A DNA stretch of 64,000 nt from assembly GCF_032062105.1 (NCBI RefSeq), contig NW_026939914.1, positions 1-64,000 on the forward strand. The letters are read 5' to 3'. The stretch is from Saccostrea cucullata. Taxonomy: Eukaryota. The notes beneath the pieces are model-generated. The model was not told where the DNA came from and did not search any database. It was given only the letters and a program-made list of their open reading frames with translations. A program made the translations under genes and the position numbers. This document shows positions 37,277 through 58,949 of this stretch, in pieces (within the stretch, counting starts at the first letter, position 1; the number at the start of each line of letters is the position of its first letter).

Positions 37277-39232
37277 GAATGGATTTATGGATTAAAGGTC
37301 AATAGGTCACTCTCTACCATCAGGTCATACATTCACTGTATGCATAAGGAAGGAACCAACAATTAATTTGTAAGGGATACTAAGTATTTCAAATGAGAGC
37401 TTTACATTTAAAAGGATATAGGTAAAAACTTCAGGTTTCCTTGAAACTGGAAACGGTGAAATTTCTCAAAACCGATTGAAAGGAATAACATTGGTTTTAC
37501 TTGAATTTTTAAAAGCCTGTTTTTAAGAAAGTCAGTCAATGATAATACTGATGGTTTGCACTTATTGAAATGTCTGAGTTTACAAAGCCATCCAATGTCT
37601 GCATTGTCAGACCATGCATCTGCTAAAACCTGCATTGATGAATTGTCCAATGCACACATTGAAAGACCGTGGTCCCGGCTAATTTCTACATTGTAATACA
37701 TGTCCTGTATTGAGATGCGTGAAAGCTGACCTGAGTCTTGCATTAACTAATTTTTTTTCCTCAAATTGACTGATTCACTGCATAGAGGAATGTTGAAAAG
37801 CAAAGCGTTTATTATCTGCATTTAGATGTTCACACTTATTAAACATTGTATCAATGCAGATCTGAATGTTGAACATTAAAAACAACTTGGATAAAATCAC
37901 CTTAAACTTGAAACGAAATACATGGAGATGACAAACAGTATTCAAACTCGAAAGTCCATTAAACAATACAATCAGGACCAGAGCAAATACGGACATCTAA
38001 AAACATGGAAAAAGGTGATATCAGGTACCACAACGGAGTGAGCATCCCCTGCGGATCGTTAACCCTTCCGTGTGCTCCTTTAATGATCTGTAAATAACGG
38101 GAAAGTCTGTCGACAATTTAGTGTATAAATAATGGCCAAATAATTAGCATTTCGCAAACTTTGTTTCTTAAAAAACATTCTGATTGTACGAACAAGTAAT
38201 CTGAAGCTGACATTGAAAAGATGTTTGAGTTTCTGATTGACAATATCTAAGTTGTTTTTGGAGACCAGGTCCTCCAACAATTTATTGGAATTCCCATGGG
38301 AATCAACTGCGCCCCTTATTAATATACTTATTTGTATTATGATGTGGAATTTGTCCAAAGTCTAATGCGTGAAAAGTAGAGTAAACCTGCTGTGGCCTTC
38401 AACTCGACGTTAAAGCTGAACACTACACGTAAAAAGGCATAGTCCGCCGTGTTTCCCGTTCATCAACGCTCTCCCTACAACCCCTATATAAGGAGAAGTA
38501 CAGTTACAGTTAAATGTATTTCGCTGTAGTGGTCAGACGAGTGTAGACGTACATCTTGCACTGCTGTGCTACTCGGTCGCGATGGAGTTATCAAATTTTA
38601 ATCATTTTATTCCAAAACAAGACAAAATATCATGAAAAATACAGGTCAATACATTATTCACAAACAGTAAATGCGCATAAAAACAGGGAATAAACGCAAA
38701 AAATTTAAGACCAAAAAATGGATACTACATGTCGGCCACGAGTTTCGAGTGTGCAATCGAGTGTAACAAAATCAAAGGGTTTCTATACACGTCTGACGGT
38801 GCCTATTTATTGATATTTAATGACATTAAATTATTATTTATACACAAATTGTCTTTTCTAGCCTTTGTGACTGAACTAAATTTGTTGCATTTTATTTTTT
38901 TATGTAATCAGGATGTGTTTCTATAAATAGTTTTTGTTTATGGGGTATTTTTTGGATTGACCAATAAGAAAAGAGTAGCCAGGGGCATTGATGCCTAGAG
39001 GGGGAGTCTGGCAATTGCAGTTGGAGCCTGGAAGTCACGGACTATTGTGCAGAAGCTATTATCTTCGATTTCCTCTACCATTCACAAAATGGATTACTTT
39101 TAAAACCTGTTATGCGTGTGTATTAGATGTTTTTATATGTTATAGGAACTTTTGACGTTTATATGTAGTGTTTCTGAGACGAATTCGACTGACTTTGTGT
39201 TTCATAATAATAACGTTACGTAACTTCGTAAG

Positions 39233-42200
39233 ATGGGACCTAAACGATCCACAAGACCTGCCCCGTATGATCCAGAACTCCCCGCAAACTGGCATGTTTC
39301 CCGATTGAAAGAGTTTTTGAATAATCGCGGAATAAACTTCCCACAGACCGCACGTAGATCAGTGTTGATACGTCTAGTGGAACAAGAGTATATTAATAGA
39401 ACAGAGACAAGTGCGCGATCCCAGAGTTCCGTGCAGCACAACAACAATGGCGGCGGTCGAGAACTAATAGACATTGTCACGAAGCTGACCTCTACGGTAC
39501 AGAACTTACAGCAGAATGTAATTAGTTTGACTTCCAGAGTTAACACCTTGACCTCGACGTCTCTATCTACTGATGTGAACTCGAGACCCAGCGAAATTAC
39601 AAATACACCGCTGCCAAATTCCACGATCACAACGCCGACGGTGAATCCAACTGTAAGTGTAACAACAGCTCTAGATCCTAGCAGCGGACAAAATGTGGCC
39701 ACTACAGAAATATCAAACAATTTCAACATTTCGTCAGCTATTACGGCCATGCAGACTTCAACACCACGCATTGTATCGGCGGCGGCCGGATCTGAAGCTC
39801 AACTGGGCAGGCCCGATTACACTAGGACTAGATATGGCTACGCGGCAGAATCTCTCCCCTTAGTGGAGACGATCTCTCCCCAACTAAGACAGCAGATAAC
39901 GGCAGGTAAGGATGTTAATCTTGCCGCCTTATTAATTCCCTATTATGCTCCTACTACAGAAGACAAAGCCACCGACAAAAAAACGGATTATAGGCTTTGT
40001 TAAAGTGAAATTTTGTGTGAAATTGTTTGTATAATTAATGCTTGATTTATATTATCTTAATCTTGTTGATTTGTAGTAATTGCTCTAAGCTGCAGACTGC
40101 AGTGATCTGTTTATGTGAAAAGGTCTTGACCGCTCATTAAGATTTGGCTGTGAAATTTAGCTCTTGTATCAGCATTGCTGACTTTTATCACCCGAGTCTC
40201 AGGGGGATTGAATGTCCGAAGTGCTGGCCATGAGAAAATGCAGAATTCATAGTGTTCACAATTAACGGGTTAATTTAGCAGTGATTGGCAGTCTGTAGGT
40301 TGGGCAGTTCTTAATATTTAGCGTAGAATTTGTGTGTTCAATTAGTTACTCAGTCGGGTCCTGTGTGTAAAGTGTTACACGGGAATACAAAATAAACTTT
40401 GTTGGAAACTTTGGGCATTTTTATTTAAAAAACAGAAAGTTTCTGTGTAACATTTTAAGTGGTGGCAGCGGTAAAGGATCCTAATTAAATGTGAAATATT
40501 GTTTGAAATTTTATATATATTTGGATTTAACAAGTGGAAATAAAATGCCTAGGAAACAGGACTTGAATTGGAATTACAACTTTCTAAACAAAACCAGGAA
40601 CATGAATTGCGTTTAAAAACACTTGAATTGGAACATGAAAAAGAAATTTTGGAATTACGTGTTCAGATAGAGAAGGCCAATTCAACACCAGGAGCACATT
40701 CGACAGGAATTCCAAAAATTAAACTTCAACCATTTAATCAGGAAAAGGATGACATTTTGTGCTATCTCTCTGAATTTGATGCGGTAGCTGAGCATGCAGG
40801 TTGGACTGAGAACTCAAAGGCTTTACAGCTTAGGTCACTTTTAACCGGAGAAGCTCGAGAAGTGTCGCAGCAAGTGACTTCGGGATACAGAGATCTGTAT
40901 AAGGCTCTTTTGAATCGATTCGGCAAGCGCCCAGCAGACTACTTTCAGTTCCTGGAGGAAATTAAACGTAGACCAGGAGAAACTTACAGAGGATTAATGT
41001 CGAGAATAGATCTGTATTTGAGTTGTTTCATTGATGAGAAAGATCCCGTACAAAAGTTCCGAGAAGAGTATTTCTTAAAGGCGTTATCTCCTCAACAAGC
41101 CCAGTGGATTAGACGGAATAAGGGAAGTAGTGAGTTAGTTGAAGCTGCTGAGGATTACATTCTACTAACAAAATCGGCTGAGGACAGAAAACTTCAAAAT
41201 CCTAAAGTGTTAGGTGAGAAGAAGAGCCAGGAACAGGGGAACTCCGGAAAACAGAAAAGTTTGGAAAAAGTGAAATGTTTTAGCTGTGGGAACTTTGGAC
41301 ATTATGCAAACAAATGCCCAAAGAAAGGTAATCTAGCGTCGTGTTTCGTGAAAGGAGCATTATGGGGTTTACATTATGTTCCGGGGAAAGTGGATGATGT
41401 GGAAGTGTCAATGGTCAAGGACACTGGAACATCTATGACGCTATTGCGGGAGGATCTTGTTGATCCAAAATGTGTTCTACATGGACAAACTACTTCCTTG
41501 GTTACAGCTATTGGACAGCCATTCGAGGCTAAGTTAGCAGTGGTTAACCTGGAAACACCAATGTTTAAGGGACATGTTCAGGTAGGTTTAGTACCTGATC
41601 TGGTTGCAGATGGTTTATTGGGAATAGATGTTCTGGAGAGGAACAAAGTCGCAGGTGTGGTTACGAGAGCCAAAGCAAAAGAACAAGAACAAAATGAAGT
41701 AAATGCCAAAAATCGCATGAATAAATGTGATGTCGAACCAAGGGACTTAAATGTCGTGGTAACTAAGGATGAGGCTGATGAAGTGAACCTTGATTTACCG
41801 GAAATTACATTACTGGCAGCAGCAGAAAATGAAATTGGAATTGAACAGCAATTTCCTAACGACACCACAGAAACAATTTCAGATCTTGTCTTTTGACATG
41901 GGCTGACACAAGTGCAGAGACAGAGTTTAAGGGATGTTTGTCAGAAATTTTCAAGAATTTTCACATCAAAGCCAGGAAAGTGTGATGTTATCTCACATAC
42001 AATCAGAACAACGTCTGAGAATCCAATTACTCAGAGACCTTACAGGATACCGGAAGCTAAGAAACAGGAAGTGAAGGAGTCTTTGAATGAAATATTAGAA
42101 CAAGGACTTATTACACCATCCAAAAGTCCGTGGGCCTCACCAATTGTCCTTGTCAACAAGCCTGATGGGACAATTAGAATATGTGTTGATTACAGAAAAT

Positions 42201-45200
42201 TGAATGAAATAACTCTCACGGATCCTTATCCCATTCCACGCATGAGTGAAATATTTGAGAAAATTGGAAGTGCAAAATATTTGAGTAGATTTGATCTTAC
42301 AAAAGGCTACTGGCAAGTTCCTCTGGCAAAGGAAACACGTGAGAAATCCGCCTTCATCACCCCATTTGGCCTTTTCGAGTTTACAGTGATGCCGTTTGGT
42401 ATGAAGACGTCTCCAGCATCATTCATAAGACTTATGGATCGTATTTTAGATGGAACTCAAAATACTGTTGCGTACTTTGATGACATAATTGTCTACAGTC
42501 AGACGTGGGAAGACCATATCAAACATGTAACAGAGCTACTTCAGCGTATTCATGAGGCCAATCTTACCATCAGACCATCAAAATGTAAGTTGGGAGCAAC
42601 AGAAATCATGTGTTTGGGACATATAGTTGGAGGGGGATCAATTCGACCAGACCCTCGGAAATTGAAGGCCATGGAGGATTTTCCGCTTCCCTTGACAAAG
42701 AAAGAATTAAGATCATTCTTGGGGCTAACTGGATACTATCGCCAGTATTTAGGAAATTATGCGGACATAACTGTACCACTGACTGATCTACTGAGAAAAA
42801 GTCAACCCGCAGAATTAAAATGGACGGAGAGGGAAGTGCAGTCATTCAAGAAACTGAAGGAGGCCCTGATGACAGCTCCTGTTTTGGTCAATCCGAACTT
42901 CAATTTACCGTTTGTACTACAAACAGATGCGAGTAATAACGCAATTGGGGCTGTCCTGAGCCAACAGTTGCCAGATGGTGATCACCCAGTTGCTTACCTT
43001 AGTAAGTAGTAAGAAGTTACTTCCGAGGGAAAAGAATTATTCAACGATAGAGAAGGAATTATTGGCTATCGTTTGGGCCATTGGATCGTTCTCGTATTAC
43101 CTAGAACGGAGGAAGTTTTACGTAGAAACAGATCACAATCCACTAACATGGTTGCAGAATGATAATAAAGAATAAAAATCAGAGACTTTTACGTTGGGCC
43201 CTCGCACTACAATCGTACACCTTTGAAGTTAGATATAAGAGAGGAAGCAAAAACACAAATGCAGACGAATTATCAAGAATCTGAAAAGTGAAATGTGTTT
43301 GTGAATTATGGGCAATTTTTGTGAAAATTTTATATTCATAAAATTCAAGTGCATTCAGTTTGGATTTACAGTGAAATTCATTTTGGATTTATATTATTCT
43401 TTTGATGATTAATTGCTATTAACTGTTTAATACTTATTTAGTGACTGGCTAAAGTGAATTTAGTGACTGGTTAAATTTAATGTTGCTATATAAAGAATTA
43501 TGAACTTGGAAAAAATTCAACTATTGACAGTTAAATTTTTATCTTTGGAAGGGAGGTGTTAAAGTGAAATTTTGTGTGAAATTGTTTGTATAATTAATGC
43601 TTGATTTATATTATCTTAATCTTGTTGATTTGTAGTAATTGCTCTAAGCTGCAGACTGCAGTGATCTGTCTATGTGAAAAGGTCTTGACCGCTCATTAAG
43701 ATTTGGCTGGGAAATTTAGCTCTTGTATCAGCATTGCTGACTTTTATCACCCGAGTCTCAGGGGGATTGAATGTCCGAAGTGCTGGCCATGAGAAAATGC
43801 AGAATTCATAGTGTTCACAATTAACGGGTTAATTTAGCAGTGATTGGCAGTCTGTAGGTTGGGCAGTTCTTAATATTTAGCGTAGAATTTGTGTGTTCAA
43901 TTAGTTACTCAGTCGGGTCCTGTGTGTAAAGTGTTACACGGGAATACAAAATAAACTTTGTTGGAAACTTTGGGCGTTTTTATTTAAAAACAGAAAGTTT
44001 CGGTGTAACATTTTAAGTGGTGGCAGCGGTAAAGGATCCTAATTAAATGTGAAATATTGTTTGAAATTTTATATATATTTGGATTTAACAAGTGGAAATA
44101 AAATGCCTAGGAAACAGGACTTGGAATTGGAATTACAACTTTCTAAACAAAAACAGGAACATGAATTGCGTTTAAAAACACTTGAATTGGAACATGAAAA
44201 AGAAATTTTGGAATTACGTGTTCAGATAGAGAAGGCCAATTCAACACCAGGAGCACATTCGACAGGAATTCCAAAAATTAAACTTCAACCATTTAATCAG
44301 GAAAAGGATGACATTTTGTGCTATCTCTCTGAATTTGATGCGGTAGCTGAGCATGCAGGTTGGACTGAGAACTCAAAGGCTTTACAGCTTAGGTCACTTT
44401 TAACCGGAGAAGCTCGAGAAGTGTCGCAGCAAGTGACTTCGGGATACAGAGATCTGTATAAGGCTCTTTTGAATCGATTCGGCAAGCGCCCAGCAGACTA
44501 CTTTCAGTTCCTGGAGGAAATTAAACGTAGACCAGGAGAAACTTACAGAGGATTAATGTCGAGAATAGATCTGTATTTGAGTTGTTTCATTGATGAGAAA
44601 GATCCCGTACAAAAGTTCCGAGAAGAGTATTTCTTAAAGGCGTTATCTCCTCAACAAGCCCAGTGGATTAGACGGAATAAGGGAAGTAGTGAGTTAGTTG
44701 AAGCTGCTGAGGATTACATTCTACTAACAAAATCGGCCGAGGACAGAAAACTTCAAAATCCTAAAGTGTTAGGTGAGAAGAAGAGCCAGGAACAGGGGAA
44801 CTCCGGAAAACAGAAAAGTTTGGAAAAAGTGAAATGTTTTAGCTGTGGGAACTTTGGACATTATGCAAACAAATGCCCAAAGAAAGGTAATCTAGCGTCG
44901 TGTTTCGTGAAAGGAGCATTATGGGGTTTACATTATGTTCCGGGGAAAGTGGATGATGTGGAAGTGTCAATGGTCAAGGACACTGGAACATCTATGACGC
45001 TATTGCGGGAGGATCTTGTTGATCCAAAATGTGTTCTACATGGACAAACTACTTCCTTGGTTACAGCTATTGGACAGCCATTCGAGGCTAAGTTAGCAGT
45101 GGTTAACCTGGAAACACCAATGTTTAAGGGACATGTTCAGGTAGGTTTAGTACCTGATCTGGTTGCAGATGGTTTATTGGGAATAGATGTTCTGGAGAGG

Positions 45201-48200
45201 AACAAAGTCGCAGGTGTGGTTACGAGAGCCAAAGCAAAAGAACAAGAACAAAATGAAGTAAATGCCAAAAATCGCATGAATAAATGTGATGTCGAACCAA
45301 GGGACTTAAATGTCGTGGTAACTAAGGATGAGGCTGATGAAGTGAACCTTGATTTACCGGAAATTACATTACTGGCAGCAGCAGAAAATGAAATTGGAAT
45401 TGAACAGCAATTTCCTAACGACACCACAGAAACAATTTCAGATCTTGTCTTTTGACATGGGCTGACACAAGTGCAGAGACAGAGTTTAAGGGATGTTTGT
45501 CAGAAATTTTCAAGAATTTTCACATCAAAGCCAGGAAAGTGTGATGTTATCTCACATACAATCAGAACAACGTCTGAGAATCCAATTACTCAGAGACCTT
45601 ACAGGATACCGGAAGCTAAGAAACAGGAAGTGAAGGAGTCTTTGAATGAAATATTAGAACAAGGACTTATTACACCATCCAAAAGTCTGTGGGCCTCACC
45701 AATTGTCCTTGTCAACAAGCCTGATGGGACAATTAGAATATGTGTTGATTACAGAAAATTGAATGAAATAACTCTCACGGATCCTTATCCCATTCCACGC
45801 ATGAGTGAAATATTTGAGAAAATTGGAAGTGCAAAATATTTGAGTAGATTTGATCTTACAAAAGGCTACTGGCAAGTTCCTCTGGCAAAGGAAACACGTG
45901 AGAAATCCGCCTTCATCACCCCATTTGGCCTTTTCGAGTTTACAGTGATGCCGTTTGGTATGAAGACGTCTCCAGCATCATTCATAAGACTTATGGATCG
46001 TATTTTAGATGGAACTCAAAATACTGTTGCGTACTTTGATGACATAATTGTCTACAGTCAGACGTGGGAAGACCATATCAAACATGTAACAGAGCTACTT
46101 CAGCGTATTCATGAGGCCAATCTTACCATCAGACCATCAAAATGTAAGTTGGGAGCAACAGAAATCATGTGTTTGGGACATATAGTTGGAGGGGGATCAA
46201 TTCGACCAGACCCTCGGAAATTGAAGGCCATGGAGGATTTTCCGCTTCCCTTGACAAAGAAAGAATTAAGATCATTCTTGGGGCTAACTGGATACTATCG
46301 CCAGTATTTAGGAAATTATGCGGACATAACTGTACCACTGACTGATCTACTGAGAAAAAGTCAACCCGCAGAATTAAAATGGACGGAGAGGGAAGTGCAG
46401 TCATTCAAGAAACTGAAGGAGGCCCTGATGACAGCTCCTGTTTTGGTCAATCCGAACTTCAATTTACCGTTTGTACTACAAACAGATGCGAGTAATAACG
46501 CAATTGGGGCTGTCCTGAGCCAACAGTTGCCAGATGGTGATCACCCAGTTGCTTACCTTAGTAAGTAGTAAGAAGTTACTTCCGAGGGAAAAGAATTATT
46601 CAACGATAGAGAAGGAATTATTGGCTATCGTTTGGGCCATTGGATCGTTCTCGTATTACCTAGAACGGAGGAAGTTTTACGTAGAAACAGATCACAATCC
46701 ACTAACATGGTTGCAGAATGATAATAAAGAATAAAAATCAGAGACTTTTACGTTGGGCCCTCGCACTACAATCGTACACCTTTGAAGTTAGATATAAGAG
46801 AGGAAGCAAAAACACAAATGCAGACGAATTATCAAGAATCTGAAAAGTGAAATGTGTTTGTGAATTATGGGCAATTTTTGTGAAAATTTTATATTCATAA
46901 AATTCAAGTGCATTCAGTTTGGATTTACAGTGAAATTCATTTTGGATTTATATTATTCTTTTGATGATTAATTGCTATTAACTGTTTAATACTTATTTAG
47001 TGACTGGCTAAAGTGAATTTAGTGACTGGTTAAATTTAATGTTGCTATATAAAGAATTATGAACTTGGAAAAAATTCAACTATTGACAGTTAAATTTTTA
47101 TCTTTGGAAGGGAGGTGTTAAAGTGAAATTTTGTGTGAAATTGTTTGTATAATTAATGCTTGATTTATATTATCTTAATCTTGTTGATTTGTAGTAATTG
47201 CTCTAAGCTGCAGACTGCAGTGATCTGTCTATGTGAAAAGGTCTTGACCGCTCATTAAGATTTGGCTGTGAAATTTAGCTCTTGTATCAGCATTGCTGAC
47301 TTTTATCACCCGAGTCTCAGGGGGATTGAATGTCCGAAGTGCTGGCCATGAGAAAATGCAGAATTCATAGTGTTCACAATTAACGGGTTAATTTAGCAGT
47401 GATTGGCAGTCTGTAGGTTGGGCAGTTCTTAATATTTAGCGTAGAATTTGTGTGTTCAATTAGTTACTCAGTCGGGTCCTGTGTGTAAAGTGTTACACGG
47501 GAATACAAAATAAACTTTGTTGGAAACTTTGGGCGTTTTTATTTAAAAACAGAAAGTTTCGGTGTAACATTTTAAGTGGTGGCAGCGGTAAAGGATCCTA
47601 ATTAAATGTGAAATATTGTTTGAAATTTTATATATATTTGGATTTAACAAGTGGAAATAAAATGCCTAGGAAACAGGACTTGGAATTGGAATTACAACTT
47701 TCTAAACAAAAACAGGAACATGAATTGCGTTTAAAAACACTTGAATTGGAACATGAAAAAGAAATTTTGGAATTACGTGTTCAGATAGAGAAGGCCAATT
47801 CAACACCAGGAGCACATTCGACAGGAATTCCAAAAATTAAACTTCAACCATTTAATCAGGAAAAGGATGACATTTTGTGCTATCTCTCTGAATTTGATGC
47901 GGTAGCTGAGCATGCAGGTTGGACTGAGAACTCAAAGGCTTTACAGCTTAGGTCACTTTTAACCGGAGAAGCTCGAGAAGTGTCGCAGCAAGTGACTTCG
48001 GGATACAGAGATCTGTATAAGGCTCTTTTGAATCGATTCGGCAAGCGCCCAGCAGACTACTTTCAGTTCCTGGAGGAAATTAAACGTAGACCAGGAGAAA
48101 CTTACAGAGGATTAATGTCGAGAATAGATCTGTATTTGAGTTGTTTCATTGATGAGAAAGATCCCGTACAAAAGTTCCGAGAAGAGTATTTCTTAAAGGC

Positions 48201-51200
48201 GTTATCTCCTCAACAAGCCCAGTGGATTAGACGGAATAAGGGAAGTAGTGAGTTAGTTGAAGCTGCTGAGGATTACATTCTACTAACAAAATCGGCCGAG
48301 GACAGAAAACTTCAAAATCCTAAAGTGTTAGGTGAGAAGAAGAGCCAGGAACAGGGGAACTCCGGAAAACAGAAAAGTTTGGAAAAAGTGAAATGTTTTA
48401 GCTGTGGGAACTTTGGACATTATGCAAACAAATGCCCAAAGAAAGGTAATCTAGCGTCGTGTTTCGTGAAAGGAGCATTATGGGGTTTACATTATGTTCC
48501 GGGGAAAGTGGATGATGTGGAAGTGTCAATGGTCAAGGACACTGGAACATCTATGACGCTATTGCGGGAGGATCTTGTTGATCCAAAATGTGTTCTACAT
48601 GGACAAACTACTTCCTTGGTTACAGCTATTGGACAGCCATTCGAGGCTAAGTTAGCAGTGGTTAACCTGGAAACACCAATGTTTAAGGGACATGTTCAGG
48701 TAGGTTTAGTACCTGATCTGGTTGCAGATGGTTTATTGGGAATAGATGTTCTGGAGAGGAACAAAGTCGCAGGTGTGGTTACGAGAGCCAAAGCAAAAGA
48801 ACAAGAACAAAATGAAGTAAATGCCAAAAATCGCATGAATAAATGTGATGTCGAACCAAGGGACTTAAATGTCGTGGTAACTAAGGATGAGGCTGATGAA
48901 GTGAACCTTGATTTACCGGAAATTACATTACTGGCAGCAGCAGAAAATGAAATTGGAATTGAACAGCAATTTCCTAACGACACCACAGAAACAATTTCAG
49001 ATCTTGTCTTTTGACATGGGCTGACACAAGTGCAGAGACAGAGTTTAAGGGATGTTTGTCAGAAATTTTCAAGAATTTTCACATCAAAGCCAGGAAAGTG
49101 TGATGTTATCTCACATACAATCAGAACAACGTCTGAGAATCCAATTACTCAGAGACCTTACAGGATACCGGAAGCTAAGAAACAGGAAGTGAAGGAGTCT
49201 TTGAATGAAATATTAGAACAAGGACTTATTACACCATCCAAAAGTCCGTGGGCCTCACCAATTGTCCTTGTCAACAAGCCTGATGGGACAATTAGAATAT
49301 GTGTTGATTACAGAAAATTGAATGAAATAACTCTCACGGATCCTTATCCCATTCCACGCATGAGTGAAATATTTGAGAAAATTGGAAGTGCAAAATATTT
49401 GAGTAGATTTGATCTTACAAAAGGCTACTGGCAAGTTCCTCTGGCAAAGGAAACACGTGAGAAATCCGCCTTCATCACCCCATTTGGCCTTTTCGAGTTT
49501 ACAGTGATGCCGTTTGGTATGAAGACGTCTCCAGCATCATTCATAAGACTTATGGATATTTTAGATGGAACTCAAAATACTGTTGCGTACTTTGATGACA
49601 TAATTGTCTACAGTCAGACGTGGGAAGACCATATCAAACATGTAACAGAGCTACTTCAGCGTATTCATGAGGCCAATCTTACCATCAGACCATCAAAATG
49701 TAAGTTGGGAGCAACAGAAATCATGTGTTTGGGACATATAGTTGGAGGGGGATCAATTCGACCAGACCCTCGGAAATTGAAGGCCATGGAGGATTTTCCG
49801 CTTCCCTTGACAAAGAAAGAATTAAGATCATTCTTGGGGCTAACTGGATACTATCGCCAGTATTTAGGAAATTATGCGGACATAACTGTACCACTGACTG
49901 ATCTACTGAGAAAAAGTCAACCCGCAGAATTAAAATGGACGGAGAGGGAAGTGCAGTCATTCAAGAAACTGAAGGAGGCCCTGATGACAGCTCCTGTTTT
50001 GGTCAATCCGAACTTCAATTTACCGTTTGTACTACAAACAGATGCGAGTAATAACGCAATTGGGGCTGTCCTGAGCCAACAGTTGCCAGATGGTGATCAC
50101 CCAGTTGCTTACCTTAGTAAGTAGTAAGAAGTTACTTCCGAGGGAAAAGAATTATTCAACGATAGAGAAGGAATTATTGGCTATCGTTTGGGCCATTGGA
50201 TCGTTCTCGTATTACCTAGAACGGAGGAAGTTTTACGTAGAAACAGATCACAATCCACTAACATGGTTGCAGAATGATAATAAAGAATAAAAATCAGAGA
50301 CTTTTACGTTGGGCCCTCGCACTACAATCGTACACCTTTGAAGTTAGATATAAGAGAAGAAGCAAAAACACAAATGCAGACGAATTATCAAGAATCTGAA
50401 AAGTGAAATGTGTTTGTGAATTATGGGCAATTTTTGTGAAAATTTTATATTCATAAAATTCAAGTGCATTCAGTTTGGATTTACAGTGAAATTCATTTTG
50501 GATTTATATTATTCTTTTGATGATTAATTGCTATTAACTGTTTAATACTTATTTAGTGACTGGCTAAAGTGAATTTAGTGACTGGTTAAATTTAATGTTG
50601 CTATATAAAGAATTATGAACTTGGAAAAAATTCAACTATTGACAGTTAAATTTTTATCTTTGGAAGGGAGGTGTTAAAGTGAAATTTTGTGTGAAATTGT
50701 TTGTATAATTAATGCTTGATTTATATTATCTTAATCTTGTTGATAACGGCAGGTAAGGATGTTAATCTTGCCGCCTTATTAATTCCCTATTATGCTCCTA
50801 CTACAGAAGACAAAGCCACCGACAAAAAAACGGATTATAGGCTTTGTTAAAGTGAAATTTTGTGTGAAATTGTTTGTATAATTAATGCTTGATTTATATT
50901 ATCTTAATCTTGTTGATTTGTAGTAATTGCTCTAAGCTGCAGACTGCAGTGATCTGTTTATGTGAAAAGGTCTTGACCGCTCATTAAGATTTGGCTGTGA
51001 AATTTAGCTCTTGTATCAGCATTGCTGACTTTTATCACCCGAGTCTCAGGGGGATTGAATGTCCGAAGTGCTGGCCATGAGAAAATGCAGAATTCATAGT
51101 GTTCACAATTAACGGGTTAATTTAGCAGTGATTGGCAGTCTGTAGGTTGGGCAGTTCTTAATATTTAGCGTAGAATTTGTGTGTTCAATTAGTTACTCAG

Positions 51201-54200
51201 TCGGGTCCTGTGTGTAAAGTGTTACACGGGAATACAAAATAAACTTTGTTGGAAACTTTGGGCGTTTTTATTTAAAAACAGAAAGTTTCGGTGTAACATT
51301 TTAAGTGGTGGCAGCGGTAAAGGATCCTAATTAAATGTGAAATATTGTTTGAAATTTTATATATATTTGGATTTAACAAGTGGAAATAAAATGCCTAGGA
51401 AACAGGACTTGGAATTGGAATTACAACTTTCTAAACAAAAACAGGAACATGAATTGCGTTTAAAAACACTTGAATTGGAACATGAAAAAGAAATTTTGGA
51501 ATTACGTGTTCAGATAGAGAAGGCCAATTCAACACCAGGAGCACATTCGACAGGAATTCCAAAAATTAAACTTCAACCATTTAATCAGGAAAAGGATGAC
51601 ATTTTGTGCTATCTCTCTGAATTTGATGCGGTAGCTGAGCATGCAGGTTGGACTGAGAACTCAAAGGCTTTACAGCTTAGGTCACTTTTAACCGGAGAAG
51701 CTCGAGAAGTGTCGCAGCAAGTGACTTCGGGATACAGAGATCTGTATAAGGCTCTTTTGAATCGATTCGGCAAGCGCCCAGCAGACTACTTTCAGTTCCT
51801 GGAGGAAATTAAACGTAGACCAGGAGAAACTTACAGAGGATTAATGTCGAGAATAGATCTGTATTTGAGTTGTTTCATTGATGAGAAAGATCCCGTACAA
51901 AAGTTCCGAGAAGAGTATTTCTTAAAGGCGTTATCTCCTCAACAAGCCCAGTGGATTAGACGGAATAAGGGAAGTAGTGAGTTAGTTGAAGCTGCTGAGG
52001 ATTACATTCTACTAACAAAATCGGCTGAGGACAGAAAACTTCAAAATCCTAAAGTGTTAGGTGAGAAGAAGAGCCAGGAACAGGGGAACTCCGGAAAACA
52101 GAAAAGTTTGGAAAAAGTGAAATGTTTTAGCTGTGGGAACTTTGGACATTATGCAAACAAATGCCCAAAGAAAGGTAATCTAGCGTCGTGTTTCGTGAAA
52201 GGAGCATTATGGGGTTTACATTATGTTCCGGGGAAAGTGGATGATGTGGAAGTGTCAATGGTCAAGGACACTGGAACATCTATGACGCTATTGCGGGAGG
52301 ATCTTGTTGATCCAAAATGTGTTCTACATGGACAAACTACTTCCTTGGTTACAGCTATTGGACAGCCATTCGAGGCTAAGTTAGCAGTGGTTAACCTGGA
52401 AACACCAATGTTTAAGGGACATGTTCAGGTAGGTTTAGTACCTGATCTGGTTGCAGATGGTTTATTGGGAATAGATGTTCTGGAGAGGAACAAAGTCGCA
52501 GGTGTGGTTACGAGAGCCAAAGCAAAAGAACAAGAACAAAATGAAGTAAATGCCAAAAATCGCATGAATAAATGTGATGTCGAACCAAGGGACTTAAATG
52601 TCGTGGTAACTAAGGATGAGGCTGATGAAGTGAACCTTGATTTACCGGAAATTACATTACTGGCAGCAGCAGAAAATGAAATTGGAATTGAACAGCAATT
52701 TCCTAACGACACCACAGAAACAATTTCAGATCTTGTCTTTTGACATGGGCTGACACAAGTGCAGAGACAGAGTTTAAGGGATGTTTGTCAGAAATTTTCA
52801 AGAATTTTCACATCAAAGCCAGGAAAGTGTGATGTTATCTCACATACAATCAGAACAACGTCTGAGAATCCAATTACTCAGAGACCTTACAGGATACCGG
52901 AAGCTAAGAAACAGGAAGTGAAGGAGTCTTTGAATGAAATATTAGAACAAGGACTTATTACACCATCCAAAAGTCCGTGGGCCTCACCAATTGTCCTTGT
53001 CAACAAGCCTGATGGGACAATTAGAATATGTGTTGATTACAGAAAATTGAATGAAATAACTCTCACGGATCCTTATCCCATTCCACGCATGAGAAATATT
53101 TGAGAAAATTGGAAGTGCAAAATATTTGAGTAGATTTGATCTTACAAAAGGCTACTGGCAAGTTCCTCTGGCAAAGGAAACACGTGAGAAATCCGCCTTC
53201 ATCACCCCATTTGGCCTTTTCGAGTTTACAGTGATGCCGTTTGGTATGAAGACGTCTCCAGCATCATTCATAAGACTTATGGATATTTTAGATGGAACTC
53301 AAAATACTGTTGCGTACTTTGATGACATAATTGTCTACAGTCAGACGTGGGAAGACCATATCAAACATGTAACAGAGCTACTTCAGCGTATTCATGAGGC
53401 CAATCTTACCATCAGACCATCAAAATGTAAGTTGGGAGCAACAGAAATCATGTGTTTGGGACATATAGTTGGAGGGGGATCAATTCGACCAGACCCTCGG
53501 AAATTGAAGGCCATGGAGGATTTTCCGCTTCCCTTGACAAAGAAAGAATTAAGATCATTCTTGGGGCTAACTGGATACTATCGCCAGTATTTAGGAAATT
53601 ATGCGGACATAACTGTACCACTGACTGATCTACTGAGAAAAAGTCAACCCGCAGAATTAAAATGGACGGAGAGGGAAGTGCAGTCATTCAAGAAACTGAA
53701 GGAGGCCCTGATGACAGCTCCTGTTTTGGTCAATCCGAACTTCAATTTACCGTTTGTACTACAAACAGATGCGAGTAATAACGCAATTGGGGCTGTCCTG
53801 AGCCAACAGTTGCCAGATGGTGATCACCCAGTTGCTTACCTTAGTAAGTAGTAAGAAGTTACTTCCGAGGGAAAAGAATTATTCAACGATAGAGAAGGAA
53901 TTATTGGCTATCGTTTGGGCCATTGGATCGTTCTCGTATTACCTAGAACGGAGGAAGTTTTACGTAGAAACAGATCACAATCCACTAACATGGTTGCAGA
54001 ATGATAATAAAGAATAAAAATCAGAGACTTTTACGTTGGGCCCTCGCACTACAATCGTACACCTTTGAAGTTAGATATAAGAGAGGAAGCAAAAACACAA
54101 ATGCAGACGAATTATCAAGAATCTGAAAAGTGAAATGTGTTTGTGAATTATGGGCAATTTTTGTGAAAATTTTATATTCATAAAATTCAAGTGCATTCAG

Positions 54201-55430
54201 TTTGGATTTACAGTGAAATTCATTTTGGATTTATATTATTCTTTTGATGATTAATTGCTATTAACTGTTTAATACTTATTTAGTGACTGGCTAAAGTGAA
54301 TTTAGTGACTGGTTAAATTTAATGTTGCTATATAAAGAATTATGAACTTGGAAAAAATTCAACTATTGACAGTTAAATTTTTATCTTTGGAAGGGAGGTG
54401 TTAAAGTGAAATTTTGTGTGAAATTGTTTGTATAATTAATGCTTGATTTATATTATCTTAATCTTGTTGATTTGTAGTAATTGCTCTAAGCTGCAGACTG
54501 CAGTGATCTGTTTATGTGAAAAGGTCTTGACCGCTCATTAAGATTTGGCTGTGAAATTTAGCTCTTGTATCAGCATTGCTGACTTTTATCACCCGAGTCT
54601 CAGGGGGATTGAATGTCCGAAGTGCTGGCCATGAGAAAATGCAGAATTCATAGTGTTCACAATTAACGGGTTAATTTAGCAGTGATGGGCAGTCTGTAGG
54701 TTGGGCAGTTCTTAATATTTAGCGTAGAATTTGTGTGTTCAATTAGTTACTCAGTCGGGTCCTGTGTGTAAAGTGTTACACGGGAATACAAAATAAACTT
54801 TGTTGGAAACTTTGGGCGTTTTTATTTAAAAACAGAAAGTTTCGGTGTAACAGGCTTCAAAGAGTCTTGACACTGGGGGAGTTTATACAGGCGTTCGGAA
54901 TCTACAAAAACATAATGTGTAATTCATACCCACAAAGGAGAACGGAATTGGATCTATACGAGCGAGACATAGTGGAAATGGCCACAGGTTACCCAGGTAA
55001 AGGGTTTTACGAATATCACAGACAGTTTAGCTTAATTGCGGCTTCACATTTGAAGTTCAACAACATACTGGTGGACTGGTCAGTTCGCAACAATACGTTG
55101 TTCTGCAACATTTTCGCTAATGCCAAAGCACAAACTTGTTCTTGGTGCAACAGCACTCTGCATTTGTCTGGATTTTGCCCTCTGTCTAAGACATCTGTAG
55201 ACAGAAAACAAAGGGATAGAGACATAGATTCATATGGAAGGAAACGTCATTTCAGTGCAGGAAGAGAGATTTGTAACAACTTTAATGGGGCAAAAGGATG
55301 TGCACTTGCTCGTTGTAGGAATGCTCATATTTGTATTGATTGTAAGGGAGATCACTCTAGATTGAAATGCGACAGTTCAAAAAACTCTCAATGGCCCCAA
55401 ACTGGGGCCTCGAATCAACAGAAACTGTGA
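39233..55430 (+). CDS. Gag-like ORF1 of the YR retroelement, split by the Gypsy array (39233-39997 joined to 54858-55430)
   Basis: Removing the insertion restores the frame DYRL-QRVLTLGEFIQAF. N-terminal HeH/LEM-like segment (WHVSRLKEFLNNRGI..RRSVLIRL). C-terminal CSWC-x4-H-x4-C, CCCH-like and CIDC-x3-H-x4-C fingers. Confidence 0.85.
40460..40472 (+). promoter_or_regulatory. Primer-binding site, tRNA-Leu type (repeated after each 5' LTR)
   Basis: TGGTGGCAGCGGT, 7 nt after the LTR end. Confidence 0.8.
40545..43284 (+). pseudogene. Gypsy unit 1 gag-protease-RT-RNase H
   Basis: CFSCGNFGHYANKC knuckle, KDTG protease, YFDD RT and TDAS RNase H. Extra 1-nt deletion near the start (~40564), TGA at 41894 and frameshifts at ~43005 and ~43165. 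Confidence 0.93.
43547..43556 (+). promoter_or_regulatory. Polypurine tract (repeated in each unit)
   Basis: GGAAGGGAGG immediately before the LTR TG. Confidence 0.85.
44103..46843 (+). pseudogene. Gypsy unit 2 gag-protease-RT-RNase H
   Basis: Same domains and shared lesions as unit 1; SPW changed to SLW. Confidence 0.93.
47662..50399 (+). pseudogene. Gypsy unit 3 gag-protease-RT-RNase H
   Basis: Same domains and lesions; 3-bp deletion LMDRIL to LMDIL. Confidence 0.93.
50742..50844 (+). repeat. Duplicate of the left insertion flank (39895-39997) inside the Gypsy array
   Basis: GATAACGGCAGGTAAGG...GATTATAGGCTT is identical to the DIRS gag flank and is joined to a truncated LTR at a GAT microhomology. 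Confidence 0.95.
51391..54126 (+). pseudogene. Gypsy unit 4 gag-protease-RT-RNase H
   Basis: Shares the 3-bp deletion with unit 3, plus a 2-bp RT frameshift at ~53093. Confidence 0.93.
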
Positions 55431-57043
55431 TTAGCAATCTCAATTCGGAGATCACCACACCTGTAAATATTGATGTACTACAAAACATGTTGTTTGATCA
55501 TCCAAATAAAACTTTCACAGACTATTTACTACATGGTTTGAAGCAGGGTTTCCACACAGGTATACAGATCATTCCAGATAAATCATTTGAATGCAAGAAT
55601 TTAAGATCTGCAACGTTACAACCAGACGTGGTTACTGAGCTAATTCAAGTGGAGGTAAGCAAAGGATATCTTTATGGACCCTTTGACCAAATTCCCTTCT
55701 CTCAGTATCGCATTAACCCCATTGGAGTGGCTGAAAGCAAGTATTCCAAAAAGAAACGCCTTATTGTAGACATGTCAGCACCTCATAATGATGAAATGCA
55801 TCCTAGTTTGAATGAGCTGATAGACAAAGAAGAATTCTCGTTAAGCTATGTTACCCTTGACGATGCTATTCGGCTCATAAAAAATTTGTGGAAAGGAGCT
55901 CTACTGATAAAAACTGACATTACAGATGCATTCAAAATAATGCCCATATGTCACAAACTTTGGCCGTATCATGGTGTGAAATGGAACAAGAAGTACTATT
56001 TCTTCAAACGCTTAGTATTTGGTAGTCGTTCTAGCCCAAAGATTTTCGACCATTTATCTTCAGCAGTTTGCTGGATTGCGGAAAATAAGTACAATATTTC
56101 CAATATTTTGCATCTTTTGGATGATTTTCTGGTCATCGTGCCTCAGAACAACAATGCGAGTGAAATAATGCAAAGATTCCTGGACATTTTCAACAAACTA
56201 GGCATACCTCTATCTGCAAAGAAAACTGAAGGACCTTGCACAGAGCTAGAATACTTGGGAATCTTTTTAGACACTGTACGTATGGAAGCAAGATTACCGA
56301 GAGAAAAGATTAAAAGAATCTCTGAAATAGTAGAATCTTTTCTTCATCGCAAAGCATGCACGAAAAGGGAACTACTCAGTCTCCTGGGACATCTGAATTT
56401 TGCATGCCGGGTTATCCTTCCAGGCCGTTCTTTCATTTCACATTTGATATCAGTGTCTACCTCCGTCAAAATGCTGCATCACCATGTTCATCTTACCAGC
56501 ATGTGTAGAGCTGATCTCACCATGTGGGCGAAGTTCTTACGTTCTTGGAATGGTGTATCCTTTTTCATCAATGACAACATAACTGAAGCTGCAGATATGC
56601 AGCTGTATACAGATGCAACACTTGTTTCATTTGGCGGATTCTATCAAAACAAATGGTTCCAAGGACACTTCGCACCTGAAATTCTGGAAGAGCAAACTTC
56701 AATGGCCTTCTTTGAACTATATCCGATTGTTATGGCTTGTCTTCTGTGGGGGCATAATTGGCAAAGGAAAAGAATTTTATTTCACTGTGACAATAGGGCA
56801 ACGGTAGACATAATTCATAAAGGGCGATCCAAAGTTAATAGCATCATGAAATTAATGAGGACATTGACTTTTCATGCAGCAAGTAATCATTATGTCATTC
56901 ATGCAAAACATATTGAGGGCATAAAAAACTCAATAGCGGACTCTATTTCTCGTTATCAGATGGAGAGATTTCGATGCCTGGCCCCACACTCCGATCCAGA
57001 GCCCATTCCTTGCCTGCATCATTCCGAGATGTTGATGGATTAG
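55367..57043 (+). CDS. DIRS/Ngaro-type reverse transcriptase-RNase H
   Basis: RINPIG, KRLIVDMS, KTDITDAF, LVFGSRSSP, HLLDDF, LEYLGI, LYTDA, ELYPI, HCDN and ADSISR. No methyltransferase domain follows. Confidence 0.95.
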   Translation: MRQFKKLSMAPNWGLESTETVISNLNSEITTPVNIDVLQNMLFDHPNKTFTDYLLHGLKQGFHTGIQIIPDKSFECKNLRSATLQPDVVTELIQVEVSKGYLYGPFDQIPFSQYRINPIGVAESKYSKKKRLIVDMSAPHNDEMHPSLNELIDKEEFSLSYVTLDDAIRLIKNLWKGALLIKTDITDAFKIMPICHKLWPYHGVKWNKKYYFFKRLVFGSRSSPKIFDHLSSAVCWIAENKYNISNILHLLDDFLVIVPQNNNASEIMQRFLDIFNKLGIPLSAKKTEGPCTELEYLGIFLDTVRMEARLPREKIKRISEIVESFLHRKACTKRELLSLLGHLNFACRVILPGRSFISHLISVSTSVKMLHHHVHLTSMCRADLTMWAKFLRSWNGVSFFINDNITEAADMQLYTDATLVSFGGFYQNKWFQGHFAPEILEEQTSMAFFELYPIVMACLLWGHNWQRKRILFHCDNRATVDIIHKGRSKVNSIMKLMRTLTFHAASNHYVIHAKHIEGIKNSIADSISRYQMERFRCLAPHSDPEPIPCLHHSEMLMD

Positions 57044-58012
57044 AGCAAGCAGTACAGGATTTATGGGACAAGTCCTTAAGCCACTCTACCAAGCAGACGT
57101 ACAGTTCCGCTTTTCAGACTTTTATAACATTCATGCAAATGAATGGAGTAACATTTTTAAATGATGGCTTACCACCTGTAAATGAGACTGTTCTTGTTTA
57201 TTTTGTAACACATTGTAAATCAGTGTTGAAACTCAAGCATGACACTATTAAATTGTACTTAGCTGGAATTCGTTTCCACTATATAAGAGCAGGTTACGGA
57301 GATATTTTGCAGGGTTGTGACCAATTACAATATGTTTTACGAGGAATTAAAAGATCTCAAATGAATGTACATAATAAACGCTTACCTATTACTGTTGACA
57401 TTTTACAACAGCTTTTGCATGTGTTAGATAAAGGTTTTTTTTTTCCCTTTTGTAGATCTCATGTTGAAGTGTATGTTTTCTTGTGCCTATTTTGGTTTTC
57501 TCAGATGTGGGGAAATCACTTGTAAAAGTACCAACTCCTTAGAATTTGTACAGATTGGTGATGTTGTTATGCAATCCGACAAAAATGCCTTTGTTTTGAG
57601 ACTAAAATCTTCTAAGACAGATCCTTTCTCCAGAGGTGTAGATATTACAATTTATGAGAACGAACATTTGAAACCTGTACATATTATGATGTCATATTTA
57701 GAAATTCGCAAGTCTCTACCATTTTTGTTATCTTCACCTCTTTTTGTAGACAGTGAATTCAATTTAGCACCAATTTTAAGAGAAAAATTTGTACAACTTT
57801 TAAGACAACTGCTCCTACGACTAGGTTATCCTGTAAATAATTTTGCTGGTCATTCTTTCCGTATAGGAGCAGCCACTGCAGCAGCTGCTGCTGGTGTTGA
57901 AGATCATGTGATTAAAGAACTAGGTAGATGGTCTTCAAATTGTTATATCAGGTATATAAGAACTAATTCGCAAGTCATAAGGGAAGCTCAAGAAAAAATG
58001 AGTGGTAGATAA
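56974..58012 (+). CDS. Tyrosine recombinase of the YR retroelement (frameshift in T10 at 57435-57444, possibly a sequencing error)
   Basis: Core-binding N-terminus plus catalytic R (FLRCGE), K (SKTD), HSFR, GRW and Y (CYIRY). Confidence 0.92.
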
Positions 58013-58085
58013 GGTTTTCATTGATTGTTTTTTTAAAAAAAATTTGTTACAAATATTCAATTAACATTGTTCTATAATATAAATA

Positions 58086-58799
58086 CTCTTGGGGGCTTCA
58101 CTCATTACTTCGTTCATTTGGCGTTCATTCCCGGGGAATTTTGCCCCCAATATTACTTATATTTAAATTTTGTGTGTCTGAAGTGGATTTGTTCTGTTTA
58201 AATACTTCGAATGTATAGTGTAGTACATGTATATAAGAATGGTTATATTTTATGCATCAAAACAATGGGATTAGCCCATAGTTTGTACTCGAAGGTATTT
58301 GTCTGGTTATGTAGCCTGCTGGGATCAGCCCCAGGCGTGATGCACTCCTGGGATCAGCCCGGAGTGTGGGTTCTACTTTAGCCTTTAGGGATCAGCCCAA
58401 GGCTAGGTATCTTGTTTACATCCTCTCGGGATCAGACCAGAGGTCCGTCAGGTTTTCGTGGCCTGCTGGGATCAGCCCCAGGCATATCACTCCTGGGATC
58501 AGCCCGGAGTGGCGATTTGTGCTTGCCTCTAGGGATCAGCCCTAGGCGTGTTTCCTGTTGAGCATCCTCTTGGGATCAGCCCAGAGGATTGTCTTGTTAG
58601 TAGCCTGCCGGGATCAGCCCCAGGCATTGTGCACTCCTGGGATCAGCCCGGAGTTGTTTTTGGTGCTTGCCTTTAGGGATCAGCTCTAGGCAGAATTGGG
58701 TCTAATTGTTTCGAGATCAGGTTGGATTTATTTATTGATCGCAGTTAAGAGTTGGAAGGAAAGGTAGAGAAAGTAATGAGTAGCCCCCAGAGCGCCAAA
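58086..58799 (+). ncRNA. Structured non-coding region: 12 GGGAT(C/T)AGCCC hairpins with variable, self-complementary lower stems, enclosed by a long-range stem
   Basis: Cores at 58267, 58321, 58350, 58388, 58428, 58468, 58495, 58532, 58572, 58610, 58639 and 58676. Closing helix 58086-58110 / 58771-58792. Confidence 0.75.
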
Positions 58800-58949
58800 C
58801 AAGTATGAGTTTTGAGATTTACAATATTGTAAATATTTTTTCTATGTGTTCATGTTTTTTATGGATTTTTGATATGTTAAATATTAAACCAACTGAACCT
58901 CTTAAACCTTGTTTTGTTTTGTGTATAAATGAGAAGTGTTCAGCTTTAA

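What the first reader, a model, noticed from the sequence alone, without database searches (positions are those of the whole stretch)
38410..58949. YR retroelement packaged between short Kolobok-type TIRs with a TTAA duplication instead of DIRS/Ngaro terminal repeats
Seen: an 11-bp TIR (13/15 when extended) with TTAA on both sides, and a cleanly rejoined empty site (Penelope RT AFNSTLRFIDD). Without the Gypsy array the unit is ~5.7 kb: ~820 bp leader, gag, RT-RH, YR, hairpin array and ~150 bp tail. By eye I found no ITR/ICR or split direct repeats. Established: YR retrotransposons integrate circles and normally make no TSD, while TTAA with RR..YY ends is typical of Kolobok DDE transposons. Inference: either the retroelement cassette is cargo mobilised in trans by a Kolobok transposase, making a hybrid element, or a YR element inserted into a small Kolobok MITE.
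Basis: partly seen in the sequence, partly recalled or inferred. Interest (0 to 1): 0.8.

Follow-up and report, generated by a model that had tools for sequence, protein, structure and literature searches.

The report
Retroelement nested inside an ordinary TTAA MITE
The short inverted ends and TTAA duplication belong to an old, abundant 412-bp miniature DNA transposon, into which a Ngaro-type tyrosine-recombinase retroelement later landed, so this is ordinary nesting of mobile elements and not a hybrid.

Summary
TTAA plus an 11-bp (13/15) inverted repeat bounds 38414-58945, and the flanks rejoin in frame. The ends do not belong to the retroelement.

- **The ends are a MITE.** 38414-38810 plus 58931-58945 are the two parts of a roughly 412-bp MITE. 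Its TTAA-plus-end 17-mer occurs 297 times in this oyster genome, against 0 for the control. All 20 sampled copies have TTAA at the left end and 18 of 20 at the right.
- **An empty site exists.** Contig C12099 carries the same flanks with the MITE intact and no retroelement. The YR element sits 15 bp from the MITE's right end, with no duplication or loss of target bases.
- **The composite has not moved.** Both MITE/retroelement junctions occur only at this locus, in three contigs that represent it.
- **The family has normal terminal repeats.** Other copies lie at unrelated sites and show Ngaro-type split direct repeats (A1-body-B1-A2-B2). The window copy is an A1-body-B1 form.
- **The Gypsy-like array is a third layer.** It has five LTRs, four internal units and a GGCTT duplication, and it interrupts the element's gag.

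Interest is low. By-products are an exact empty/filled pair for a Ngaro-like insertion and a 51-bp palindrome at the B|A junction.

The parts
38410..38413 (.). Left TTAA target-site duplication of the MITE
   Evidence: All 20 sampled family copies have TTAA at the left end.
38414..38810 (+). Left 397 bp of a roughly 412-bp TTAA-specific MITE (end AGCTGAACACTAC...). It is about 85% identical to other family copies and 99.7% to the uninterrupted copy on C12099.
   Evidence: The boundary with the retroelement is ambiguous by one T (38810).
38811..39058 (+). Repeat A1 of the Ngaro-type YR retroelement (about 250 bp). Its first 38 nt form the right part of the B|A junction palindrome.
   Evidence: Contig breakpoints at 38809 in independent runs.
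39233..39997 (+). N-terminal 255 codons of ORF1 (gag-like, weak HeH/SAP-like match), cut by the LTR-element insertion. The frame resumes at 54859 and ends at 55430. The ORF is 445 aa and uninterrupted in copies on C3606 and C10755.
39998..54853 (+). Tandem array of an integrase-less Ty3/Gypsy-like LTR element. It has 5 LTRs of 455 bp (TG...CA) and 4 internal units (zinc-knuckle gag, protease, RT, partial RNase H). The 5-bp duplication GGCTT lies at 39993-39997 and 54854-54858.
   Evidence: Other YR copies are continuous from 39997 to 54852.
55367..57043 (+). ORF2 of the YR retroelement, 558 aa, with a reverse transcriptase domain.
   Evidence: Pfam RVT_1, E = 1.6e-13. Nearest Atlas clusters are mollusc RVT_1 proteins.
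56974..58012 (+). Tyrosine recombinase gene, read here in two overlapping frames (183 + 183 aa). The window has one base more in a run of T near 57435 than the C3606 copy. The C3606 copy reads 345 aa with LRCGE, HSFRIGAAT and CYIRY motifs.
58119..58930 (+). Repeat B1 (812 bp), which holds the 144-bp-period hairpin-like sub-repeats. The element ends ...GTGTATAAA(T). This copy has no A2-B2.
58931..58945 (+). Right-hand 15 bp of the MITE (GAGAAGTGTTCAGCT).
   Evidence: 17 of the 19 sampled uninterrupted copies read exactly ...CCTATTTAT|GAGAAGTGTTCAGCT. L012 and L027 differ by one base each, and L028 is cut short at its right end.
58946..58949 (.). Right TTAA target-site duplication of the MITE

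Best explanation
The stretch is four nested mobile elements, each ordinary for its kind.

1. A degraded RT-bearing retroelement is the host. Its family has at least 2,900 candidate copies.
2. A roughly 412-bp non-autonomous DNA transposon (MITE) entered at a TTAA and duplicated it. The TTAA duplication and AG...CT ends fit the Kolobok signature.
3. Much later, a Ngaro-type tyrosine-recombinase retroelement integrated 15 bp from the MITE's right end, between ...CCTATTTA(T) and GAGAAG... It neither duplicated nor lost target bases, as expected for conservative recombination between a circular cDNA and the target. That last step is inferred from what is established for the family.
4. Most recently, an integrase-less Gypsy-like LTR element inserted into the retroelement's gag with a GGCTT duplication. 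It was then amplified into a 4-unit tandem array.

The 11-15-bp inverted ends and the TTAA therefore have nothing to do with how the retroelement moves.

The family's normal form is A1-body-B1-A2-spacer-B2. The window copy has only A1-body-B1. The most likely cause is B1 x B2 homologous recombination after insertion (inferred, about 0.6). Integration of a monomeric circle is the alternative (about 0.35).
For: - **Two repeat families in the leader.** The leader 38414-39232 splits into two. Bases 1-397 match hundreds of loci at about 85%. Bases 395-819 match only YR-element copies.
- **Tail stops short of the end.** YR-element tails match only up to 58930. The last 15 bp do not.
- **Intact MITEs.** The 19 sampled uninterrupted MITE copies run straight from ...CCTATTTAT into the 15-bp end, with the exceptions listed under parts, and have TTAA flanks. 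The TTAA-plus-end 17-mer occurs 297 times, against 0 for the control.
- **Empty site.** C12099:975098-975509 has the same flanks and the intact MITE at 99.7% with no retroelement. It is colinear with the window for more than 10 kb.
- **Junctions are unique to this locus.** 120-bp probes across both junctions match in full only on C22051, C22440 and C10892. The flanks of the latter two are about 99% identical to the window (93% over the 214 bp next to the MITE on C10892). All other hits break at the junction.
- **Other copies.** Other YR copies have different flanks and the A1...B1-A2-B2 architecture.
- **Independent samples.** Contigs from independent runs place the B end, or unrelated DNA, directly before 38809. 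None places the MITE there.
- **Age order by identity.** Host element 76-84%, MITE about 85%, YR copies 96-99%, LTRs 99-100%.
- **Coding capacity.** RT by Pfam. Tyrosine-recombinase motifs and a Cre-like C-terminus.
Against: - Only the top 40 candidates of each own-genome search are scored. A diverged second composite could be missed, although a full-length match would rank first.
- C12099 could be a paralogue and not the allele. It still shows the MITE-only state.
- Three or four assembly versions of one locus in a presumably diploid genome are unexplained.
- The MITE's superfamily rests on end signatures only.
- Absence of a methyltransferase domain, the Ngaro versus PAT criterion, rests on ORF length and a blank Pfam scan. 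The structure model was unusable.
Confidence: 0.95

Rival explanations
1. Hybrid element: the gag/RT/YR cassette has replaced its own terminal repeats with Kolobok-type ends and is moved as cargo by a Kolobok transposase acting in trans.
For: TTAA plus perfect 11-bp inverted ends bound the whole 20.5-kb unit, and the flanks rejoin cleanly. This particular copy lacks A2-B2. Earlier unchecked notes of this scan report Kolobok-type transposons in this genome.
Against: The ends are those of a separate 412-bp MITE, and 397 bp of its body sits between the left end and the retroelement. The same locus exists with the MITE alone. The composite junctions occur at this locus only. The MITE copy is about 85% identical to its relatives while the YR copies are 96-99% alike, so the ends are much older than the cargo.
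Confidence: 0.02
2. The filled state is ancestral, and the MITE-only copy on C12099 arose by precise recombinase-mediated excision of the retroelement.
For: Tyrosine recombinases can in principle reverse an integration. The junction is exact on both sides.
Against: Excision would need the B|A recombination site rebuilt from the two ends. The nested Gypsy-like array and the 96-99% flank divergence fit an older empty haplotype more simply. Nothing was observed that requires excision. The nesting order stays the same either way.
Confidence: 0.03
3. The missing A2-B2 in the window copy is an assembly collapse of the B1-A2-B2 repeat and not a real structure.
For: B is an 812-bp repeat, and the assembly shows other oddities: a homopolymer frameshift, an odd array junction and several versions of the locus.
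Against: Two contigs (C22051 and C10892) differ by about 1% and by array length, and both go from the B end straight into the 15-bp MITE end. Other copies in the same assembly keep B1-A2-B2.
Confidence: 0.05

Closest known systems
Ngaro-type tyrosine-recombinase retrotransposons (order DIRS)
   Same: Gene order gag, then RT(/RH), then YR. Split direct repeats with A1 at the 5' end and B1-A2-B2 downstream of the YR gene in family copies, as defined in PMC13465315 and PMC4157794. No target-site duplication. No methyltransferase domain detected. Ngaro and DIRS elements are reported in bivalves (PMC10294476).
   Different: The window copy is a monomeric A1-body-B1 form. Family placement by RT/YR phylogeny was not done. 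The B repeat carries an array of hairpin-like 144-bp-period sub-repeats, which is the subject of a separate finding.
Kolobok non-autonomous elements, such as the Xenopus T2-MITEs
   Same: TTAA-specific 4-bp duplication. Ends are 5'-AG...CT-3' (RR...YY), short inverted repeats and hundreds of copies. PMC9587614 and PMC6004289 give this signature, and Xenopus XKol ends also start with AG. Kolobok elements are common in bivalves (PMC10294476).
   Different: No autonomous partner with the same ends was identified here. Assignment rests on end signatures alone.
Nested transposon insertions and tandem LTR-retrotransposon arrays
   Same: Each layer has its own hallmark: TTAA for the MITE, no duplication for the YR element, and a 5-bp duplication for the LTR element. 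Identity to relatives rises from the outer to the inner layers.
   Different: One array junction (50672-50844) holds 73 bp of LTR followed by about 100 bp of the left-flanking gag sequence. LTR-LTR unequal exchange therefore cannot explain the whole array.

Membership tests
   Junction probes match in full only on C22051, C22440 and C10892, which are the same locus.
   19 sampled uninterrupted copies and 297 exact end matches. The identical locus on C12099 carries the intact MITE.
Kolobok (for the MITE) | [quoted passage not shown] | tested here: met
   TTAA at 20/20 left ends and 18/20 right ends sampled. A single 4-mer at the paralogous site.
Kolobok (for the MITE) | Ends 5'-RR...YY-3', unlike piggyBac (PMC9587614) | tested here: met
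   Ends are AGCTGAAC...GTTCAGCT.
Kolobok (for the MITE) | Shares its ends with an autonomous element encoding a Kolobok DDE transposase | not tested
Earlier scan notes of Kolobok elements in this genome are unchecked.
Ngaro-like YR retrotransposon | Encodes RT and a tyrosine recombinase with R...HxxR...Y motifs | tested here: met
   RVT_1 at E = 1.6e-13. Phage_integrase at E = 6.9e-5, which is below Pfam's cut-off. LRCGE, HSFRIGAAT and CYIRY motifs. Cre C-terminal match at E = 0.18.
Ngaro-like YR retrotransposon | Split direct repeats A1 ... B1-A2-B2, with the internal repeats downstream of YR | tested here: met
   Present in copies on C3606, C10755, C14640, C10038 and C9341. The window copy itself has only A1 and B1.
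Ngaro-like YR retrotransposon | No methyltransferase domain (separates Ngaro from DIRS1-like and PAT elements) | tested here: inconclusive
   ORF2 is only 550-558 aa, and Pfam finds RVT_1 alone at E <= 1. The single-sequence model of residues 301-558 had pLDDT 34 and was unusable.
Ngaro-like YR retrotransposon | RT/YR phylogenetic placement with reference Ngaro elements | not tested
DIRS1-like | Inverted terminal repeats plus an internal complementary region | tested here: not met
   No inverted repeats of 40 bp or more. The repeats are direct. The only inverted feature is a 13-nt sequence that is part of the B|A palindrome.
Ty3/Gypsy-like LTR element (the array) | LTRs TG...CA, 4-6-bp duplication, order gag-PR-RT-RH(-IN) | tested here: met
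   455-bp LTRs, GGCTT duplication, zf-CCHC plus aspartyl protease, and RVT_1 plus RT_RNaseH_2. Integrase is absent, so the element is non-autonomous.

The most novel reading that the evidence does not exclude
The window copy (A1-body-B1, with a sequence-verified empty site on C12099) may be the primary product of integrating a monomeric circular cDNA, not a later B1 x B2 deletion. It would then record the exact reaction of a Ngaro-type recombinase in an animal. The cut would be off-centre in a 51-bp imperfect palindrome formed by the B|A junction (25-nt arms, 84% complementary). The join would be to an AT-rich target with only 1-2 nt of shared sequence, no duplication and no loss.
Probability: 0.3. 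Interest if true: 0.35.

Novelty: new member of a known kind. Interest (0 to 1): 0.15.

Why it matters
It removes a false lead. A retroelement that had swapped its terminal repeats for DNA-transposon ends would have been a new kind of mobile element, and the data show plain nesting instead. Three things remain of modest use. One is a clean empty/filled pair showing that a Ngaro-like element integrates exactly and without a duplication. Another is a description of the family's repeat architecture and of the palindromic B|A junction in an oyster. The third is an example of how split-repeat elements decay into monomeric (A-body-B), solo (A-B) and internally deleted forms.

Tried and rejected
- **Structure of ORF2 residues 301-558**, to test for RNase H or a methyltransferase. 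The single-sequence model had mean pLDDT 34 and was not used.
- **More of C12099 and the middle of C10892.** Later own-genome searches gave coordinates only. The unit count of the C10892 array is therefore inferred from length.
- **Public runs laid on 38300-39300.** These were short unitig contigs only, and none bridges 38810/38811. This neither confirms nor denies the filled allele in other individuals. It did show the B|A junction and other flanks at the A start.
- **Chance inverted repeat.** Rejected by family conservation.
- **TA (Tc1/mariner) or TWA (Harbinger) duplication.** Rejected, because the full TTAA is conserved at nearly all sampled ends.
- **Large protein searches.** Not run, because the verdict does not depend on them.
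- **Joined or mended sequences.** The reading across the Gypsy insertion point rests on comparing copies.
Full report
**What the sequence shows at the stated coordinates**

The left boundary reads TTAA|AGCTGAACACT (38410-38424). The right boundary reads AGTGTTCAGCT|TTAA (58935-58949). This is a perfect 11-bp inverted repeat, 13/15 when extended. With the insert and one TTAA removed, the flanks read ...AFNSTL/RFIDD in one frame. The host RT gene is otherwise full of stop codons. A diverged paralogue of the host element elsewhere in the window (35462-35674, minus strand) has a single 4-mer at the same position, so the TTAA is a true duplication.

**The ends belong to a separate small element**

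I searched the 819-bp 'leader' against the window's own genome, and it fell into two parts.

- Bases 1-397 match hundreds of loci at about 85% identity (551 first-look candidates).
- Bases 395-819 match only a handful of loci at 95-99%. The same loci also carry the retroelement's tail.

The tail query matched those loci only up to 58930, so the last 15 bp belong to something else.

I read the ends of 19 uninterrupted copies of the abundant repeat. Each starts TTAA|AGCTGAACACTAC. Each runs about 397 bp to ...CCTATTTAT and continues directly with GAGAAGTGTTCAGCT|TTAA. Two copies carry a one-base change in that end, one is cut short, and one has a mutated right TTAA. The element is therefore a MITE of about 412 bp. 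The 17-mer of TTAA plus its first 13 bases occurs 297 times in the genome, against 0 for the reversed control.

A TTAA duplication with 5'-RR...YY-3' ends is the published signature of Kolobok, as distinct from piggyBac (PMC9587614). Xenopus Kolobok elements also begin with AG (PMC6004289). I did not find or test an autonomous partner, so 'Kolobok-type' remains a label based on the ends.

**An empty site exists**

Contig C12099 (about 975098-975509) carries the same flanks (...ggccttcaactcgacg TTAA ... TTAA gatttatcgacgac...). Between them is the intact MITE, 99.7% identical to the window's copy, and nothing else. C12099 is colinear with the window for more than 10 kb at 96-99%. It may be the other haplotype or a recent duplicate. 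Either way it shows the state before the retroelement arrived.

Comparing empty and filled sites gives the insertion point. The retroelement lies between ...CCTATTTA(T) and GAGAAG..., 15 bp from the MITE's right end. No target base is duplicated or lost, and one T is ambiguous.

**The composite has not moved**

I used 120-bp probes centred on each MITE/retroelement junction. They match over their full length only on C22051 (the window), C22440 (a 2.6-kb contig) and C10892. The flanks of the latter two are about 99% identical to the window (93% over the 214 bp next to the MITE on C10892), so all three are the same locus. Every other hit stops at the junction.

The MITE copy is only about 85% identical to its relatives, whereas the retroelement copies are 96-99% alike. 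The ends are therefore much older than the supposed cargo.

**What the retroelement is**

Other copies (C3606, C10755, C14640, C10038, C9341) align to the window as follows:

- A1 (38809-39058), then leader and gag up to 39997;
- directly on to 54852-58930, so the Gypsy-like array is absent from them;
- then A2 (a second copy of 38809-39058), a spacer of about 50 bp, and B2 (a second copy of 58119-58930).

This is the A1...B1-A2-B2 split-direct-repeat layout that defines Ngaro-like elements, and PAT elements when a methyltransferase domain is present (PMC13465315, PMC4157794).

The coding capacity is:

- ORF1 of 445 aa, gag-like, with a weak HeH/SAP-like motif and a cysteine-rich C-terminus;
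- an RT ORF of 550-558 aa (RVT_1, E = 1.6e-13);
- a 345-aa tyrosine recombinase with LRCGE, HSFRIGAAT and CYIRY motifs and a weak Cre-like match.

No methyltransferase domain was detected, and ORF2 is short. That favours Ngaro, but the test is weak, because the structure model of the ORF2 C-terminus failed.

In the window copy the recombinase gene is read in two frames. The cause is a one-base difference in a run of T near 57435. This may be real slippage or an assembly error.

**How the retroelement integrates**

The 5' ends of nine copies are always T|TGATATTTAAT..., preceded by unrelated, mostly AT-rich DNA. The 3' ends are ...GTGTATAAA followed by a variable base and unrelated DNA. Paired flanks show no duplication.

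At the internal B1-A2 junction the two ends abut and form a 51-bp imperfect palindrome, with 25-nt arms, 84% complementarity and 1 nt between them. The element boundary lies about 13 nt into the left arm. I infer that this junction, recreated on a circular cDNA, is the recombination site. The recombinase would exchange it conservatively with a target sharing only 1-2 nt. This fits what is established for the order but is not shown here.

Unitigs from independent public runs place either the B end or unrelated DNA directly before 38809. None places the MITE there. These contigs show presence only, not absence.

**Why this copy lacks A2-B2**

Both contigs that carry the insertion go from the B end straight into the MITE end. 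The genome also holds a solo A-spacer-B copy (C8202) and an internally deleted copy (C16122). Recombination and deletion among the repeats therefore do occur. The simplest reading is a B1 x B2 exchange after insertion. Integration of a monomeric circle cannot be excluded and is the most novel reading left open.

**The Gypsy-like array**

Five 455-bp LTRs (TGTTAAAG...GTGTAACA) and four internal units span 39998-54853. The internal units encode a zinc-knuckle gag, a protease, an RT and a partial RNase H, with no integrase. GGCTT is duplicated on both sides, and the array lies inside ORF1. The LTRs are 99-100% identical, so this is the youngest layer.

One junction (50672-50844) has 73 bp of LTR followed by about 100 bp of the gag sequence that lies left of the array, and then a full LTR. 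At least one amplification step therefore duplicated flank plus element, or the assembly is wrong there. By length, the array on C10892 is about 7.3 kb shorter, or roughly two units. I could not read its middle.

**Verdict**

The finding is ordinary nesting of four known kinds of element: host retroelement, TTAA MITE, Ngaro-type YR retroelement and Gypsy-like array.

Noticed in passing
window 50672-50844: Odd junction inside the Gypsy-like array. 73 bp of LTR start is followed by about 100 bp identical to the gag flank at 39895-39997, and then a full LTR. This explains the 3729-bp spacing of that unit. It points to a tandem duplication that included the flank, or to a misassembly.
   Followed up: partly
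G000:C10892:14361-27620 versus window 38414-58945: A second contig of the same locus (about 99% identical flanks) carries the same MITE, YR element and Gypsy nest. Its array is about 7.3 kb shorter, roughly two units instead of four. With C12099 (MITE only) and C22440, the assembly holds three or four versions of this locus.
   Followed up: partly
L061:2113-2163 (B1|A2 junction); window 38811-38848 and 58918-58930: The junction of the element's 3' and 5' ends forms a 51-bp imperfect palindrome with 25-nt arms, 84% complementary. The element boundary lies off-centre in it. It is a candidate recombination site for the tyrosine recombinase.
   Followed up: partly
G000:C8202:806084-807049 and G000:C16122:109086-110723: Decay forms of the same YR family. 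C8202 holds a solo A-spacer-B copy with flanks on both sides. C16122 holds a copy with nearly all coding sequence deleted.
   Followed up: partly
window 39202-39771 (minus strand): A 189-aa antisense ORF overlaps the start of gag. ORFs of 188-189 aa sit at the same place in the C3606 and C10755 copies. The copies are 97-99% identical, so this conservation says little. Pfam finds nothing.
   Followed up: no
window about 57435-57445: The frameshift that splits the recombinase gene lies in a run of about ten T. The length of this run differs among copies, so it may be an assembly or homopolymer error.
   Followed up: partly
G000:C4769:89433-91244 and G000:C566:499900-500317: Pairs of the MITE's exact TTAA-plus-13-mer end in inverted orientation, 1.8 kb and 418 bp apart. 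The 1.8-kb pair may be a longer family member or a MITE with its own insert.
   Followed up: no
window 39233-39390 (ORF1 residues 20-51): Weak HeH/LEM or SAP-like DNA-binding motif at the N-terminus of the YR element's gag-like ORF1 (E about 1e-3, below Pfam's cut-off). It is also present in the C3606 copy.
   Followed up: no
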